Origin: Mizuhopecten yessoensis
Taxonomy: Eukaryota
Direction: 5' to 3'
Assembly: GCF_002113885.1 (NCBI RefSeq)
Contig: NW_018480065.1
Coordinates: 570,961 to 634,960, forward strand
DNA length: 64,000 bases
How positions within the stretch are numbered: position 1 is the first letter of the stretch; every line of letters starts with the position of its first letter. Of this stretch, positions 7,701-51,980 are shown piece after piece. The position numbers and the translations under genes are program-made. Below the pieces are notes generated by a model. It was not told the DNA's origin. It saw only the letters and a program-made list of their open reading frames with translations, and ran no database searches.

Positions 7701-10678
7701 TACGGTATACAAAGACATTCCTACCCAAAGTCTACTGTATACGGTTAGATTCCGACCCAAAGTCTACTGTATACAGGGACCTCCCGACGCAAAGTCTACT
7801 GTATACAGGTACATTCCGACCCAAAGTCTACTCTATACAGTTACATTCCGATCCAAAGTCTACGGTATACAAAGACATTCCTACCCAAAGTCTACTGTAT
7901 ACGGTTAGCTTCCGACCCAAAGTCTACTGTATACAGGTACATTCCGATCCAAAGTCCACTGTATACAGTTACATTCCGATCCAAAGTCTACCGTATACAG
8001 TTACATTCCAACCAAAAGTCTACTGTATACAGTTACATTCCGACCAAAAGTCTACTCTATACAGTTACATTCCGACTAAAAGTCTACTGTATACAGTTAC
8101 ATTCCGACCCAAAGTCTACTGTATACAGGGACCTTCCGACGCACAGTCTACTGTATACAGGGACATTCCGACCCAAAGTCTACAGTATACAGGTACATTC
8201 CGACCAAAAGTCTACTTTATACAGTTACATTTCGACCAAAAGTCTACTCTATACAGGTACGTTCCGACACAAAGTCTACGGTATACAGGTACATTCCGAC
8301 CCAAAGTCTACTGTATACAGGTACATTCCGATCCAAAATCTACTGTATACAGGTACATTCCGACCCAAAGTCAATTGTATACAGGTACATTCCAACCCAA
8401 AGTCTACTGTATACAGGTACATTCCAACCCAAAGTCTACTGTATACAGGTACGTTCCGACACAATGTCTACTGTATACAGGTACATTCCAACCCAAAGTC
8501 TACTGTATACATGTACATTCCTACCCAAAGTCTACTGTATACAGGTACATTCCGACCCAAAGTCTAGTGTATACAGGTATGTTCCGACACAAAGTCAACT
8601 GTATACAGGTACATTCCGACCCAAAGTCAATTGTATACAGGTAACTTCCAACCCAAAGTCTACTGTATACAGGTACATTCCGACCCAAAGTCAATTGTAT
8701 ACAGGTACATTCCGACCCAAAGTCTACTTTATACAGGTACATTCCGACCCAAAGACTACTGTATACAGGTACGTTCCTACACAAAGTCTACTGTATACCG
8801 GTACATTCCAACCCAAAGTCTACTGTATGCAGGTACATTCCGACGCAAAGTCTACTGTATACAGGCACATTCCAACCCAAAGTCTACTGTATGCAGGTAC
8901 ATTCCGACGCACAGTCTACTGTATACAGGTATGTTCCGACACAAAGTCTACTGTATACTGGGACATTCCGACCCAAAGTCACTTGTATACAGGTAACTTC
9001 CAACCCAAAGTCTACTGTATGCAGGTACATTCCGACGCAAAGCCAATTGTATACAGGTACATTCGGACCCAAACTCCACTGTCTAGGGGTACATTCCGAT
9101 CCAAAGTCTACTGTATACAGGTACATTCCGACCCAAAGTCTACTATATACAGGTACATTCCGACGCAAAGTCTACTGTATACAGGTACGTTCGGACACAA
9201 AGTCTACTGTATACAGGTACATTCCGACCCAAAGTCTACTGTATACAGTTACATTCCGACGCAAAGTCAATTGTATACAGGTACATTCCGACCCAAAGTC
9301 TACTGTATACAGTTACATTCCGACCCAACGTCTACTGTATACAGTTACATTCCCTACCCAAAGTCTACTGTATACATGTACATTCCTACCCAAAGTCTAC
9401 TGTATACAGGTACATTCCGACCCAAAGTCAATTGTATACATTTAGATTCCGATCTAAAGTCTACTATATACAGGTACATTCTGACCCAATGTCTACTGTA
9501 TACAGTTACATTTCGACCCAAAGTCTACTGTATACATGTACATTCCTACCCAAAGTCTACTGTATACATTTAGATTCCGACCCAAAGTCTACTATATACA
9601 GGTACATTCCGACCCAAAGTCTACTGTATACAGGTACGTTCCGACACAATGTCTACTGTATACAGGTACATTCCGACCCAAAGTCTACGGTATACAGGTA
9701 CATTCCGATTCAAAGTCTACTGTATACAGGTACATTCCGACCCAAAGTCAATTGTATACAGGTACATTCCAACCCAAAGTCTACTGTATACAGGTACATT
9801 ACAACCCAAAGTCTACTGTATACAGGTACGTTCCGACTCAATGTCTACTGTATACAGGTACATTCCGACCCAAAGTCAATTGTATACAGGTACATTCCGA
9901 CCCAAAGTCTACTGTATACAGGTACATTCCGACCCAAAGTCTAATGTATACATGTACATTCCTACCCAAAGTCTACTGTATACATGTACATTCCAACCCA
10001 AAGTCTACTATATACAGTTATATTCAGGCCTAAATTCTACTGTATACAAATACATTCCAACCCAAAGTCTACTGTATACATTTACATTCCCTACCCAAAG
10101 TCTACTGTATACATGTACGTTCCGAGCCAAAGTCTACTGTATACAGGTACATTCCGACCCAAAGTCTACTGTATACAGGTATGTTCCGACACAAAGTCTA
10201 CTGTATACAGTTACATTCCCTACCCAAAGTCTACTGTATACATGTACGTTCCGAGCCAAAGTCTACTGTATACAGGTACATTACGACCCAAAGTCTACTG
10301 TATACAGGTATGTTCCGACATATACAGGTACATTCCGACCCAAAGTCAATTGTATACAGGTACATTCCAACCCAAAGTCTAATGTATACATGTACATTCC
10401 TACCCAAAGTCTACTGTATACAGGGACATTCCGACCCAAAGTCTACTATATACAGTTACATTCCCTACCCAAAGTCTCCTGTATACAGTTACATTCCGAC
10501 CCAACGTCTACTGAATACAGTTACATTCCCTACCCAAAGTCTACAGTATACAGTTACATTCCGACCCAACGTCTACTGTATACAGTTACATTCCCTACCC
10601 AAAGTGTACTGTATACAGTTACATTCTGACCCAAAGTCTAGTGTATACAGTTACATTCCCTACCCAAAGTCTACTGTA
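4751..10678 (+). repeat. Satellite array, 32-bp unit ACATTCCGACCCAAAGTCTACTGTATACAGGT, about 185 copies
   Basis: Directly visible. Each unit contains the palindrome CTGTATACAG; 33-bp variants occur near the end. Confidence 0.99.
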
Positions 10679-10725
10679 GAAATCATTTTTGAGTTACTTT
10701 TTTTCATCCATGGTGTCTTGTGTAG

Positions 10726-11704
10726 CAGTATACAATTGTTTCATTGGTACTGGGGGGACAGTCAAATCATTGATCCGAGGTAGCAGGGAAGACCTAGGGA
10801 ACTGTTGCCCAAGGCCGAAGGCCGAGGACAACATTTCCCTAGGTCTTCCCTGCTAACGAGGGTCAAGGATTTGACTGTTCCCCCAGTATCAATGAAACAA
10901 ACGATTTATTACCTGACTCTCTATTTAAGAAACTTGATGAATTCTGCGAGTTAGGATAACTGACTGTATGAAAGGATAGAAGATTTAATTCTACGTAATA
11001 TCTACTCAAAAACTCGTTCAGTTCTTCATTACTGCAGGTTTCGTCGATCATAACACCTTTCTCTGCACAATATTTATCCAAAATATTCACAGCTCCCTTA
11101 ATGACGTTTTTGTACTAAGAGAGTCACTATTATCCATAAGCAATTCCAAATCTTGCTGAGAAACATCCTCAAATCTGACAACAAACAAATCTGTATCCAA
11201 AAGACGCTTGAGTGGGACCGCCGACGGGGAAATTGTCTGCGCACGATTGTCGTGCATGCAACAGTTAGTATTATTACCCAATAGTCTATATAAATTATAA
11301 TTAGACATTTTTGACTGTTTCTGGCTTTTTGTCCAATTTCGGCTTTAGGGGTGAAACAGTCAAAACTGCTTTCCCGGTCAGAGTGAACTGTTACCCGGCG
11401 CGAATTCGATGCGCAGAAATCTCCCCTCGAGAGCCCCTTCAAGCGTTTCGGTGACCGCGACTCAGTGCTGAAGCAATGGCAACATTGCATGCAGCATTGA
11501 TCTAATATTTATTTGGTAATAAAACAATTGTTTCATGGTTATTTGGGGAACAGTCAAAACTATCATCCCTCGGTAGGGGGAGCCCTGTGGAACTGTTTGC
11601 ACTTGGCCTAGCGGTCTCGGGCAAGCAGTTCCCCAGGGCTTCCCCCTACCTCGGGATGATAGTTTTGACTGTTCCCCAAATAGCCATGAAACAGTTGTAT
11701 ACTG
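10726..11704 (-). mobile_element. Non-autonomous Crypton-like (DUF3504 tyrosine recombinase) element with two terminal hairpins
   Basis: Hairpins at 10736-10900 (loop GCC-GAA-GGC) and 11524-11698. Outer ends CAGTATACAATTGTTTCAT / ATGAAACAGTTGTATACTG are inverted, as are the inner edges TTTATTACC / GGTAATAAA. Encloses an ORF remnant. Confidence 0.8.
10985..11176 (-). pseudogene. N-terminal fragment of Crypton/DUF3504 (KCTD1/ZMYM-like) tyrosine recombinase, frameshifted and truncated
   Basis: Restoring one A in the A-run near 11107 gives RFEDVSQQDLELLMDNSDSLSTKNVIKGAVNILDKYCAEKGVMIDETCSNEELNEFLSRYYVEL. This matches the recalled RF..vs.ed.......s.nT......v.....y......eeLn..L..fy.e N-terminus of this family. 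Confidence 0.75.
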
Positions 11705-13667
11705 TCTACGTACAAGTTTTTTTCATCGATGGAATAAAAACTGGGTGAAGTACAGGACAAAAGCCTGTGCGGGAAACTATGTGATTTACCACTACATATG
11801 TATTGAAAATAGTTCCCAACTGATTTTATCAACTTATTACTATGTGTTTGTTTTCCAAAGCTAAAAATGATATCCCATAGATGGAAACCAACATGTGCTT
11901 AAACAATTGTAAGAGTGAACAGAAAGGCTGATTTAACAACCAGAACCTAAGTCAGCATCACTGTTTCACTGTATACAGCTCTAGATCTATGTATTAAGAG
12001 TTATGGCGACTTCTCAGAGGTGTATCATCAATATAAGTTTAAACATTTCAGAACAACAAATAAAAATTAGGTTAACCAGCAGTGTGCTTCATGTGGTATA
12101 TCAACGATGTTTTGTCTTGACAACGACAACTTATTTAATCCTTTCGTCATCTCTGAACGACGTCATTATGGGGCCAGTTCTTGTGCCCGCTTATTTATAG
12201 CTGGTATGGCATATACTTCGATACTAGTACGGTCCAAAAAAGATGGAAATGTGACCCCCTCCCTTTTGTTTTAAATTGCAACAAAATATTTTCCATCGGA
12301 TATAGTTTTATTTACTAAGAATAGAGAAGGAAAATCACAGAAAAAAAGCCACAAATACGTCATGCTTTTTATCGTTGCCTGTAGAATAGCCGGACGAACC
12401 AGACCACATCAAAGTTATAAAATGTTGTTAAATGTCAGTTTTCACAGCTACTGTAAATTGTAGCCTGCTTGAAATGTGTTCCGTTGTGTTTTGATTTACA
12501 CATTTTTAAACATTGAACAAGAAATGTTATTATCATTGGGCCTTAACTAATACCCCGTATTCACCATCTTATAACTAAAGAAAAATGAAAACAAAGGTTT
12601 ACATTTCAATTAAGAAATAACACCTGAATAAAACAGCCATAATTGTTCCTTTTAAAACTGTAGCTATGTAGTCATTGTAGTATTGCCCGTGCTAAAACTT
12701 AGGTTTTCTCTGTTAAGAAATGAAAAACCATTCGGAAATAAGGTGGTTTGATTAGTGGCAATCGTCATTGTTAATTTGTCATTTAAAAACATTTCCTCGA
12801 GGTCGGTTTTTGTTTAAACAACACTTAAGTTCACACGATAGCTTAAGGAGCCATGCACTGTAAAGGGGCCCTTGACTGTAAACTGGCATTGCTGAACGTC
12901 ACTCTTACATGTAACATCCATTCGTGGTCGTAGTATAAATACATACATTTTTTTTCTAACTATGGTAGTTTGTAAATTTTCTTAAAAGAACACGTCTACA
13001 TTTTACGTAATCGGAACGTTAATTTCCGCTCCCTTCATTTGCCATTGTGTATTGTATACAAGATACATAGAACGGCTTGATAAAAAACCTAAACTATAAC
13101 TGAAACCATGTAATAGAACTTTTACTTTGTCGATTTTAACGTAGATTCTAGTATCTATAGAATCTCGAGTTACACCGCCTCACTGCGTGTTTTCCTTACT
13201 CGTTATTTAAATCTAAAGACTAGCAATTAGTTTGCTGATAAAAATAAATTATCGGAACAAAAAACAAAATGTTTCACGAAACTTCTCTGAAACCATAGTA
13301 CATGAGAACTTATCTGCTTACATCAAGAAATGCAACGTTCGTGCGCACGGAAATAAGTCATGCGTTTTTTTACATTGCTCCAGAGTGTATAGATTAGGGA
13401 TTTCCGTCAATAAATTAAACCATTCCAATCGAGAATATTTCGCCTCCGGTGACGCAGTAGAGCATTTATGGAAAAGTTCATTGACGCAAGTACAGTATAA
13501 TGTTATTAGAAATCTCTCATTTTAAACATTATGTTTATATACAGTTTTCTCATCATTAAAGAACCATTACGGTTTTGTTGAGTTAAAGTACAAACGTTTC
13601 CGAGCAATGTTTGAAGTTCATTTCTCTTCAATGTAGACATGAAAGACACATCTTGGTATATTGACAG

Positions 13668-50865: not shown

Positions 50866-51980
50866 TGTATGGGGATTGAATGGATTTTTGTTCATGTACA
50901 TTGCGGCAATGAGTAGCAGTAGCTGTATGATCTACATATCATATGGACAGCGTTAGCGCTCTTCAGAAGATATGTAGATCAGCTACTGCTATTCATTGCC
51001 GCAATGTACATGAACAAAAATCCATTCAATTCATATATTTACGTAACGGTGAACGGTGAACTACAATAAAAAAAAGTTACATTTTTTTTGTAAATATATT
51101 ATTTTTGATATTAGTATCGGACAGAAAACCATAAAAATGGAACAGCCAGAACTCCAGCCTACACAGAAACTTCATATATTCCTTTCATTTTTAAAAGTTG
51201 ATCTGGTTATTTTTGCATTAAACACCGCATATTATATATTTCACAAAGTTTACCGCACTATTTCAACTCATCGGTCACCATAGTAATCGTCCAGGACACC
51301 CGTCGGCATTAGGCATAGAGCTCAGTTGAATGTAAATGCACAGCCGTTGAATACGCTGTTTGTCAAACAAACTGCAGATGTAAATGATGATAAATTAATG
51401 GATGAAGTGCCCTGTGTGTGCAAGTTGATGTCACAGGGATTACCCAGCCGGACGTGTGGTGTTAGAAAGTTCGTGACCACGAGGAACCGATTGCGAGTCG
51501 GAAGTCAGGATTTAATATGAGAATGTTATAAATAAAAAAAATAAAAATTCAAATAACAAAAATAAAAATAATAGTACAATGGTACGCCATTCATGATTTT
51601 CCAATGTTTTCTATTATTTCTCGAAACTACGTTATCACGGAGAAGGGGATATAAGTCTTCTCAGAAACGGTACTATACGTAATTTGATTTGTCATTGTGT
51701 GTGAAATCAGCTGACCGGTTGTATTCATAGTGTATTCATAGTCTAATGGCAGTTGTTTTCAATTGGTAGATTCATGTACAGAACAAACATCAAGAATGTA
51801 CATATAACTTATTTAAGGAATGATTTTTATTTTTTCAACATTTATGAGGTCATAACAACAATGGGTTTATGGACATATTGAATGAATCGCGTTAGCGATT
51901 CATGTAAAATATGTCCAAAAACCCATTGTTGTTATGACCTCATAAATGTTGAAAAAATAAATATCATTCCTTATATTTAC
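50866..51980 (-). mobile_element. Younger Crypton-like hairpin-ended element nested in the 50596 element
   Basis: Near-perfect hairpins at 50875-51030 and 51814-51973, both with a C-GTTA-G loop and both followed by TATATTTAC. Encloses a YR C-terminal remnant. Confidence 0.8.
51322..51510 (-). pseudogene. C-terminal tail of Crypton/DUF3504-type recombinase
   Basis: ...NPCDINLHTQGTSSINLSSFTSAVCLTNSVFNGCAFTFN* (stop 51322-51324). An S/T/N-rich tail ending FNxCxFxFN is the recalled C-terminal signature of this family. Confidence 0.65.

What the first reader, a model, noticed from the sequence alone, without database searches (positions are those of the whole stretch)
10726..11704. Best-preserved element: two mutually related hairpins around a Crypton N-terminus
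Each end is a self-complementary stem of about 170 bp, and the two ends are also related to each other (TGTTTCAT..G.T..T.GGGG.ACAGTCAAA). The stable loop lies on the + strand at the left (cGAAg) and on the - strand at the right (cGCTAg), so the ends are inverted. The ORF breaks off after YYVEL, an internal deletion of the catalytic domain. The flanks form a near-palindrome GTAG(A)CAGTATACTGTCTAC if joined across TATA, suggesting TATA-core crossover without a classical TSD.
Basis: partly seen in the sequence, partly recalled or inferred. Interest (0 to 1): 0.75.

Follow-up and report, generated by a model that had tools for sequence, protein, structure and literature searches.

The report
Two abutting hairpin-ended Crypton transposon remnants
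The stretch is not one element with two hairpin ends but two small, broken "jumping genes" lying head to head, each from a family of tyrosine-recombinase (Crypton-type) transposons that end in a single long DNA hairpin, an end structure the Crypton papers I read do not describe.

Summary
There are two palindromes of 165 and 175 bp (z about -19). They are related to each other and sit in inverted order, around a recombinase N-terminal fragment that breaks off after YYVEL.

The single-element reading does not hold. Window 10729-11270 (minus strand, "L", about 40 copies) and 11271-11701 (plus strand, "R", about 240 copies) belong to two repeat families that meet head to head. No other genomic copy contains the L-R junction.

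A typical member of either family has:
- a 5' end TTATTACC with a TATA box;
- an inverted copy of that end just before one roughly 170-bp palindrome;
- a 3' tail TTGTATA.

Longer copies carry a Crypton/DUF3504-type tyrosine recombinase gene between these ends. These include L061, L062 and L064 in this genome and L072 and L073 in two other assemblies. None carries a Helitron Rep/helicase gene.

Insertion leaves no target duplication and falls at ACA-N6-A|CTGT. The recombinase evolved under purifying selection, and 16 hairpin pairs changed on both arms between L and R.

Best reading: non-autonomous, hairpin-ended CryptonA-like elements moved in trans. A folded-hairpin, integron-like strand exchange is inferred, not shown.

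This scan's earlier notes report the same class elsewhere in this genome.

The parts
8002..10678 (.). 32-bp satellite array next to the composite; its unit contains a target-like ...A|CTGT motif
   Evidence: TRF: period 32, 83.8 copies. Motif read from the sequence. Six other R copies lie inside satellites with such motifs.
10698..10713 (+). Left copy of a 16-nt direct repeat (TTTTTTTCATCCATGG); unexplained
   Evidence: 15 of 16 identical to 11717-11732, E 0.004.
10714..10728 (.). Left flank. It is the inverted relative of the right flank and probably half of a palindromic target site.
   Evidence: It fits the family target consensus.
10729..11270 (-). L unit: a 5'-truncated, internally deleted non-autonomous copy of the L family of hairpin-ended Crypton-like elements
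   Evidence: About 40 copies at 78-95% identity share these boundaries. Family copies extend about 130 bp further 5'.
10729..10735 (-). L 3' tail TTGTATA; the element/flank joint follows it
   Evidence: Conserved in L and R copies, with varied flanks after it.
10736..10900 (-). L terminal palindrome (165 bp)
   Evidence: Compensatory changes against R.
10906..10929 (+). L subterminal inverted repeat. It is the inverted copy of the L-family 5' end, which is missing from this copy.
   Evidence: The same 24 nt begin the L-type element in L061 at position 1876.
10986..11176 (-). Remnant of the recombinase N-terminal (QRICH1-like) domain. It has a frameshift near 11106 and is cut at 10986 by the internal deletion.
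   Evidence: (80% identical to L061 over residues 29-72).
11271..11701 (+). R unit: a complete non-autonomous (MITE-like) copy of the R family
   Evidence: Copies at 94-97% identity with exact shared ends. 239 5' ends and 237 3' ends in the genome.
11271..11294 (+). R 5' terminus TTATTACC followed by a CCAAT box (11278-11282) and a TATA box (11287-11294): terminal inverted repeat plus a likely promoter
   Evidence: Read from the sequence. The same layout is at the 5' ends in L062, L072 and L073.
11306..11368 (.). Inverted pair of ACAGTCAAAA motifs. The motif recurs in both hairpin arms; candidate recombinase-binding sites (inference).
   Evidence: (pair I7).
11515..11522 (+). R subterminal inverted repeat GGTAATAA, directly before the palindrome
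   Evidence: I4. It pairs with the 5' end across the joined-ends form.
11524..11698 (+). R terminal palindrome (175 bp), overlapped by the 3' tail TTGTATA (11695-11701)
11702..11716 (.). Right flank beginning CTGT; single-copy DNA follows
   Evidence: depth drops to single copy after 11706.
11717..11732 (+). Right copy of the 16-nt direct repeat

Best explanation
Window 10729-11701 is a unique head-to-head junction of two non-autonomous deletion derivatives from two sister families (L and R) of CryptonA/DUF3504-type tyrosine-recombinase DNA transposons.

Shared architecture of the clade, which is not in the Crypton descriptions I read:
- 5' terminus TTATTACC followed by a TATA box;
- the recombinase gene, with introns, reading towards the 3' end;
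- an inverted copy of the 5' terminus (8 to 24 bp);
- directly after it, one 165-175-bp palindrome and a 3' tail TTGTATA.

When the two ends are joined, as in a circle or a tandem dimer, the short inverted repeats lengthen the palindrome. The joint then lies at a small asymmetric internal loop near the base of the stem.

What is shown and what is inferred:
- Shown: copies are inserted as whole units, without target duplication, between A and CTGT of a partly palindromic site (ACA-N6-A|CTGT). The two short units cannot move by themselves.
- Inferred: they were moved in trans by the recombinase of full-length relatives.
- Inferred: the recombinase cuts after TATA at the 3' end and after the matching A in the target, and exchanges one strand. 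The palindrome may act as a folded recombination site, as attC does for integron integrases.
- Unresolved: how the L-R junction formed. R lies at a good target-like site inside L. L lacks its 5' 130 bp. The near-palindromic outer flanks look like the two halves of the original palindromic target.
For: Two families:
- The genome search splits the stretch at 11269/11270, and only the window holds both halves joined.
- Summed contig depth over R is roughly 20-50 times that over L.

Exact ends and no duplication:
- 28 R copies and about 20 L copies share the ends.
- Six insertions inside satellites show the interrupted unit continuing without loss or gain.
- A tandem joint reads TTGTATA|TTATTACC (L010).
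- 239 5' ends against 237 3' ends.

Target logo: A at -8 in 29 of 30, A at -1 in 24 of 30, T at +2 in 56 of 56, C/G/T at +1/+3/+4 in 39-40 of 56.

The recombinase belongs to the element:
- Long L-type (L061) and R-type (L062, L064) copies carry it in the same place and orientation.
- So do 4-kb elements in two other assemblies (L072, L073). They have TTATTACC, GGTAATAA plus a related palindrome, and an R-K-HxxR-H-Y recombinase reading frame in exon-like blocks that were not joined (L072 with a frameshift).
- Homologues score E 1e-64 to 1e-30; 11 of 16 aligned members match DUF3504 and 10 match Phage_integrase.
- Between L- and R-type ORFs, synonymous sites are saturated (pS about 0.8) while pN is 0.17-0.31.

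Palindrome under constraint:
- 16 of 66 pairs changed on both arms between L and R.
- The apex CCC-2x2 mismatch-GGCC-loop-GGCC is kept in L, R and L073.
- The joined-ends fold extends the stem in all three.
Against: - No intact full-length copy was seen in this genome. L061, L062 and L064 are decayed, and the one 2.7-kb candidate is masked as N.
- No circle, excision or empty allele was observed. The runs gave only short contigs.
- The terminal layout (5' T, asymmetric inverted repeats, 3' hairpin, precise insertion, tandem copies) is also the layout of Helitron2/Helentron elements (PMC3627910). This genome holds at least 56 Helitron Rep matches.
- The window's own peptides give no significant Pfam hit. 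Exon-wise hits in relatives are below Pfam's cut-offs.
- The 5' truncation of L and the 16-nt direct repeat are not explained.
Confidence: 0.8

Rival explanations
1. One reading: one internally deleted Crypton whose two termini are both hairpins, inserted as a unit by crossover at a TATA core.
For: Two related outward-facing palindromes, inverted-repeat extension on both sides of each, and near-palindromic flanks.
Against: - The stretch splits into two families with different copy number and age: R 94-97% identity and about 240 copies, L 78-95% and about 40.
- No other copy contains the junction.
- Members of both families, and the full-length relatives in three genomes, have one hairpin only.
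Confidence: 0.04
2. The units are Helitron2/Helentron-type rolling-circle elements moved by a Rep/helicase. The recombinase gene would be captured cargo.
For: - The asymmetric terminal inverted repeats, 3' hairpin, 5' T, absence of target duplication and head-to-tail dimers match the Helitron2 description (PMC3627910).
- Rep genes exist in this genome.
Against: - Elements 2.5-4.3 kb long in three genomes contain the recombinase as the only long reading frame between the ends, with no room for a Rep/helicase.
- The recombinase was under purifying selection while the ends co-diverged.
- The insertion site is A|CTGT, not T|T.
- There is no excess of 3' ends.
- Three sampled Rep loci show no similarity to the L or R ends.
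Confidence: 0.1
3. Two unrelated palindromic MITEs or fold-back repeats happened to land on either side of a dead Crypton gene fragment.
For: Each palindrome alone looks like an all-inverted-repeat MITE.
Against: - The non-palindromic parts (R 11271-11523; L 10901-11270) always travel with their palindrome, with fixed ends.
- Those parts are collinear with the 5' regions of the recombinase-bearing copies.
Confidence: 0.03
4. The same elements and the same recombinase, but by the classical Crypton route: a double-stranded circle integrates by two strand exchanges across a short core. The palindrome would be only an accessory feature (binding platform, terminator or small-RNA source).
For: - The target's six bases before the joint match the element's TGTATA more often than chance: about 2.9 of 6 (my own arithmetic on the position counts). 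This is the microhomology described for Cryptons (PMC13465315).
- The target is partly palindromic, like a two-arm core site.
Against: - The joint is always at one fixed bond. The six bases before it come from the target at the 5' junction and from the element at the 3' junction, with no required identity.
- The joint lies inside the extended stem at a conserved internal loop in three lineages.
Confidence: 0.35

Closest known systems
CryptonA (DUF3504-type) tyrosine-recombinase DNA transposons of animals (Kojima and Jurka 2011, PMC3212892; Glomhopper paper 2026, PMC13465315)
   Same: - A single tyrosine recombinase with an R-K-HxxR-H-Y pattern and a QRICH1-like N-terminal domain.
- Homologues match DUF3504 and Phage_integrase.
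- No reverse transcriptase or DDE enzyme.
- No target-site duplication.
- Non-autonomous derivatives far outnumber coding copies.
- Some microhomology with the target.
   Different: Those papers state that animal Cryptons have no terminal repeats, direct or inverted. These elements have a fixed 5' terminus, an 8-24-bp asymmetric inverted repeat and a 165-175-bp terminal palindrome, with a defined joint and a defined target motif.
Helitron2 / Helentron termini (Bao and Jurka 2013, PMC3627910)
   Same: - The 5' terminal repeat is complementary to a sequence just upstream of a 3' hairpin.
- The 5' end starts with T.
- Insertion is precise, without duplication.
- Tandem copies occur, and so do tandem-repeat expansions.
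   Different: - No Rep/helicase.
[quoted passage not shown]
- The target is A|CTGT rather than T|T.
Integron attC x IntI and CTX-phage attP(+) x XerCD recombination (established knowledge, not tested here)
   Same: - A tyrosine recombinase is paired with a long imperfect palindrome at the end of the mobile unit.
- The unit's first bases complete the base of the stem when the unit is circular.
- The crossover lies at the stem base next to unpaired bases.
- There is no duplication and no need for core identity.
   Different: The comparators are bacterial systems with no detectable sequence relation to these sites. Single-strand folding and one-strand exchange are only inferred here.
Fold-back elements and palindromic MITEs
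   Same: Long palindromes, small size, high copy number.
   Different: Here the palindrome is at one end only. There are no target duplications. The units are deletion derivatives of recombinase-bearing elements.

Membership tests
Tyrosine recombinase (Phage_integrase / DUF3504 fold) | Catalytic pattern R...K...HxxR...H/W...Y | tested here: met
   Present in the R-type copy L064 and in L072/L073, and nearly invariant in 14 homologues. Absent from the window copy itself, where that part is deleted.
Tyrosine recombinase (Phage_integrase / DUF3504 fold) | Significant profile match | tested here: inconclusive
   - Relatives' fragments and exons score below Pfam cut-offs: Phage_integrase E 9e-4 to 0.03, DUF3504 E 1.4e-3, QRICH1 E 5e-6.
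- Homologues found with E 1e-64 to 1e-30 do match: DUF3504 in 11 of 16 (best 2e-12) and Phage_integrase in 10 of 16.
- The profile against solved structures is only weak: integrase E 0.04, XerA E 0.08.
Crypton | The recombinase is the only enzyme between the element's ends (no RT, DDE or Rep) | tested here: met
   ORF scans of L061, L064, L072 and L073 between the mapped ends.
Crypton | No target-site duplication | tested here: met
   Flank comparison of about 50 copies and six satellite-interrupted sites.
Crypton | No terminal inverted repeats; 4-6-bp direct repeats at both ends (PMC3212892) | tested here: not met
   There is an asymmetric inverted repeat plus a terminal palindrome. No fixed direct repeat is present, only enriched microhomology. 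PMC3212892 itself reports no terminal repeats of either kind in animal Cryptons, so this feature comes from the fungal and oomycete groups.
Helitron2 / Helentron | Rep/helicase in autonomous copies | tested here: not met
   None between the ends in any long copy. Three Rep loci show no similarity to these ends, with partial coverage.
Helitron2 / Helentron | Asymmetric terminal inverted repeats with a 3' hairpin after the 3' repeat | tested here: met
Helitron2 / Helentron | Insertion between T and T | tested here: not met
   The flanks are A (24 of 30) and CT (39 and 56 of 56).
attC-like folded recombination site | Recombination uses a folded single strand and exchanges one strand only | not testable with these tools
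   Only indirect support: a fixed joint at an internal loop, no core identity, and conserved apex mismatches.
Known RNA families (retrozyme hammerhead, miRNA) | Rfam match at gathering score | tested here: not met
   Only sub-threshold miRNA-precursor look-alikes on the palindromes.

The most novel reading that the evidence does not exclude
This clade of animal Cryptons may transpose through a folded single-stranded hairpin site. The recombinase would recognise the roughly 200-bp stem formed by the palindrome plus the terminal repeats. It would cut at the internal loop after TATA and make a single strand exchange with an ACA-N6-A|CTGT target. Replication would finish the job. That would be a eukaryotic counterpart of integron cassette and CTX-phage integration.
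Probability: 0.3. Interest if true: 0.85.

Novelty: new variant of a known kind. Interest (0 to 1): 0.6.

Why it matters
- Animal Cryptons are described as having no recognisable ends, and that gap has kept their mechanism hypothetical.
- These families supply exact ends, a fixed joint, a target motif and a structure conserved across at least three genomes. Together they make the mechanism directly testable with one protein and a 440-bp substrate.
- The result also explains a class of abundant hairpin repeats in a bivalve genome and their habit of landing in, and perhaps seeding, satellite arrays.
- It warns annotators that two-hairpin 'elements' can be head-to-head pairs of single-hairpin units.

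Tried and rejected
- Pfam on the window's own peptides gave nothing useful.
- The profile against solved structures gave only weak integrase/XerA hits.
- A distant homologue's contig (L066) shows no related hairpin, so it is uninformative. Another homologue had no DNA available.
- The one 2.7-kb R-type candidate for a full-length copy (contig C5557) is N over 2.28 kb. I left it as it is.
- A 6-kb pair of R ends (contig C3387) holds no recombinase.
- Laying four runs gave only short contigs. None bridges the units, and no empty allele or circle junction was seen. One 'goes back' joint is two neighbouring copies 33 bp apart.
- The right flank is single-copy, so there is no paralogous empty site.
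- Flank similarity beyond about 20 bp is not above shuffles.
- Strand-specific folding energies do not pick a strand.
- Rfam showed only generic hairpin look-alikes.
- Exons of L072 and L073 were searched one by one. The joined protein was not built or searched.

Full report
**What is there.** Window 10736-10900 and 11524-11698 are long near-perfect palindromes. As single-stranded DNA they fold at -74.6 and -81.1 kcal/mol, about 19 standard deviations below shuffled controls. They are about 78-80% identical to each other, and the similarity runs on for about 10 bp outside and about 13 bp inside each palindrome. On the minus strand, between the palindromes, lie two short reading frames. Read together they match the start of a recombinase and stop after YYVEL.

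**It is two things, not one.**
- A search of the window's own 988-Mb assembly with 10714-11716 found one full-length hit, the window itself. All other hits cover either positions 13-556 or about 557-992 of the query.
- Re-alignment puts the break at 11269/11270.
- The right part, here called R (11271-11701, plus strand), is a discrete unit of about 438 bp at 94-97% identity. All copies share the same first and last bases.
- Pattern counts give 239 R 5' ends and 237 R 3' ends, with 0 in the reversed-pattern control.
- The left part, L (10729-11270, read on the minus strand), belongs to a second family of about 40 copies at 78-95% identity.
- In four public runs the summed contig depth over R is roughly 20-50 times that over L, and it falls to single-copy depth right after 11706.

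**Anatomy of a family member.** Both families begin with TTATTACC, and a TATA box follows within about 15 bp. R has CCAAT at 11278-11282 and TATATAAA at 11287-11294. An inverted copy of the 5' terminus sits immediately before one palindrome: GGTAATAA at 11515-11522 in R, and 24 nt at 10906-10929 in L. Both families end with TTGTATA just after the palindrome. Each unit therefore has a single hairpin, at its 3' end. In the window the two units lie head to head, which is why a hairpin appears at each side.

**The coding relatives.**
- At the YYVEL break, copy L061 (contig C5556) has 2.6 kb more. It holds a decayed reading frame with the motifs GRENMR, TKNHKG, TNHCIRAT and SGHKS.
- R-type copies L062 (C3738) and L064 (C2150) start with the R 5' region and end with the R palindrome. 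They carry the same gene in the same orientation.
- L064 has an open 192-residue stretch with R, K and HxxR. The GH...SIRSY block follows after an intron-like gap.
- That stretch finds 29 proteins at E 1e-64 to 4e-10. Of 16 aligned sequences, 11 match DUF3504 (best E 2e-12), 10 match Phage_integrase and one matches QRICH1.
- Two other assemblies (ENA records, organisms not known to me) hold 4.0-4.3-kb elements, L072 and L073. These have the same 5' TTATTACC and TATA box. Their recombinase reading frame lies in exon-like blocks and keeps the catalytic motifs. L073 also has GGGTAATAA and a 175-bp palindrome that is 74% identical to R's.
- L072 ends with TGTATA followed by CTAT and has TTTGT before its 5' end, as in the scallop copies.
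- No copy has room for, or any trace of, a Rep/helicase, a reverse transcriptase or a DDE enzyme.

**The gene and the ends evolved together.** Between L-type and R-type reading frames, synonymous differences are saturated (pS 0.81-0.86). Non-synonymous differences are 0.17-0.31. So the protein was kept working while the lineages separated. Over the same period the palindromes stayed 78% identical, and 16 of 66 stem pairs changed on both arms. Single copies show one-sided, pair-breaking changes, as expected after insertion. The apex is kept in L, R and L073: CCC, a 2x2 mismatch (GA or AA on the strand opposite the gene), GGCC, a 3-4-nt loop, GGCC. This argues that the recombinase is the elements' own enzyme rather than captured cargo.

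**How copies are inserted.**
- Flanks differ from copy to copy, and there is no duplication.
- Six R copies sit in satellites whose repeat unit simply continues on the far side (L013, L016, L017, L020, L025, L026).
- A head-to-tail pair gives the joined form TTGTATA|TTATTACC (L010).
- The target is constrained. A stands at -8 in 29 of 30 with C/T at -9, and A stands at -1 in 24 of 30. After the element come C (39 of 56), T (56 of 56), G (40) and T (40).
- The site reads roughly ACAGT-N4-A|CTGT, so it is partly palindromic. Its left half resembles the element's own 3' end, which explains tandem insertions.
- The six bases before the 5' joint come from the target, and those before the 3' joint come from the element. 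They match each other only about 2.9 times in 6, by my arithmetic on the counts. So the exchange point is one fixed bond.
- Folding the joined ends extends the palindrome by 8 bp (R), 13 bp (L073) or 24 bp (L). This places the joint at a small internal loop.

**Mechanism.** Shown: the composite nature, the ends, the target, the absence of duplication, the gene-end association in three genomes, and the selection on both gene and palindrome. Inferred: the recombinase of full-length copies moves the short ones in trans. Also inferred: it cuts after TATA and after the target's A. More speculative (about 0.3) is that the palindrome acts as a folded single-strand site with one strand exchange, as in integron attC or CTX-phage integration. 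The classical double-strand circle route remains possible (about 0.35).

**The Helitron-type rival.** The terminal layout matches the published Helitron2 description, and the genome has at least 56 Rep matches. Five things speak against this rival:
- the coding content of the long copies;
- the selection on the recombinase;
- the A|CTGT site;
- the equal numbers of 5' and 3' ends;
- the lack of similarity at three sampled Rep loci (partial coverage).

**This locus.** R's 5' flank (AACAGTTAGTA) fits the target consensus and is L sequence. R is also the younger family, so R most likely inserted into an L copy. L lacks the 130 bp that other copies carry 5' of this point, including a 22-bp perfect palindrome that is often deleted in other copies too. 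That missing piece is not found beyond R. The outer flanks are inverted relatives, which would fit a palindromic original target. The order of events and the 16-nt direct repeat outside the flanks are not explained. The R 3' junction with the unique flank is bridged by a contig in run X1. In X2, X4 and X11 the overlap is 28-30 nt, just under the tool's 31-nt bridging rule. So the insertion is present in at least one other sample and is probably widespread.

[quoted passage not shown] A 2026 paper on CryptonA still describes Cryptons as lacking inverted repeats and notes that some families have no repeat description. My literature searches found no description of hairpin-ended Cryptons. Repbase entries could not be checked. 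I therefore class this as a new variant of a known kind.

**Earlier notes of this scan.** These AI notes, read only after my reading was formed, report the same class at other places of this genome. They call the genome the Yesso scallop; its size of 987.6 Mb in 82,659 contigs is shown. The notes include a conserved apex motif and another head-to-head pair. They agree with my result but are not independent evidence.

Noticed in passing
L062:2895-3718 (G000:C3738): In one R-type element a 43-bp piece of one hairpin arm is amplified into about 16 tandem copies. A satellite-like array is growing out of the palindrome.
   Followed up: partly
window 50866-51980: Two other palindromes of about 170 bp (50868-51037 and 51811-51976) are unrelated in sequence to L and R. 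Both have a GCGTTAGCG apex and both are followed by TATATTTAC. They are probably another hairpin-ended family. The same reader noted them separately.
   Followed up: partly
G000:C5383:535539-535594; L024:1925-1965: There are further head-to-head arrangements of R 5' ends: two ends 6 bp apart in C5383, and a 21-bp inverted 5' fragment 4 bp from a full copy in L024. Head-to-head junctions therefore recur.
   Followed up: no
window 10698-10713 and 11717-11732: A 16-nt direct repeat (15 of 16 identical) brackets the composite plus its inverted flanks. It is too far from the ends to be a simple target duplication.
   Followed up: partly
L067:767-3049 (G000:C5557): An R 5' end and an R 3' end lie 2.7 kb apart with 2.28 kb of N between them. 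This could be a full-length copy.
   Followed up: no
L013, L016, L017, L020, L025, L026 and window 8002-10678: R copies are often found inside or beside short-unit satellites whose unit contains the ACAGT...ACTGT-like target. About 6 of 28 sampled copies are of this kind.
   Followed up: partly
L028-L060 copies of the L family, 5' region: The L family carries a perfect 22-bp palindrome followed by a third copy of ACTGTTGCA. This spot is a hotspot of deletions among copies (for example L033, L035, L058) and is the point where the window's copy is truncated.
   Followed up: partly
L061:12-1247 and L064:601-2086: Reverse-transcriptase/RNase H-type reading frames of an unrelated retroelement lie next to two of the long Crypton copies.
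   Followed up: no
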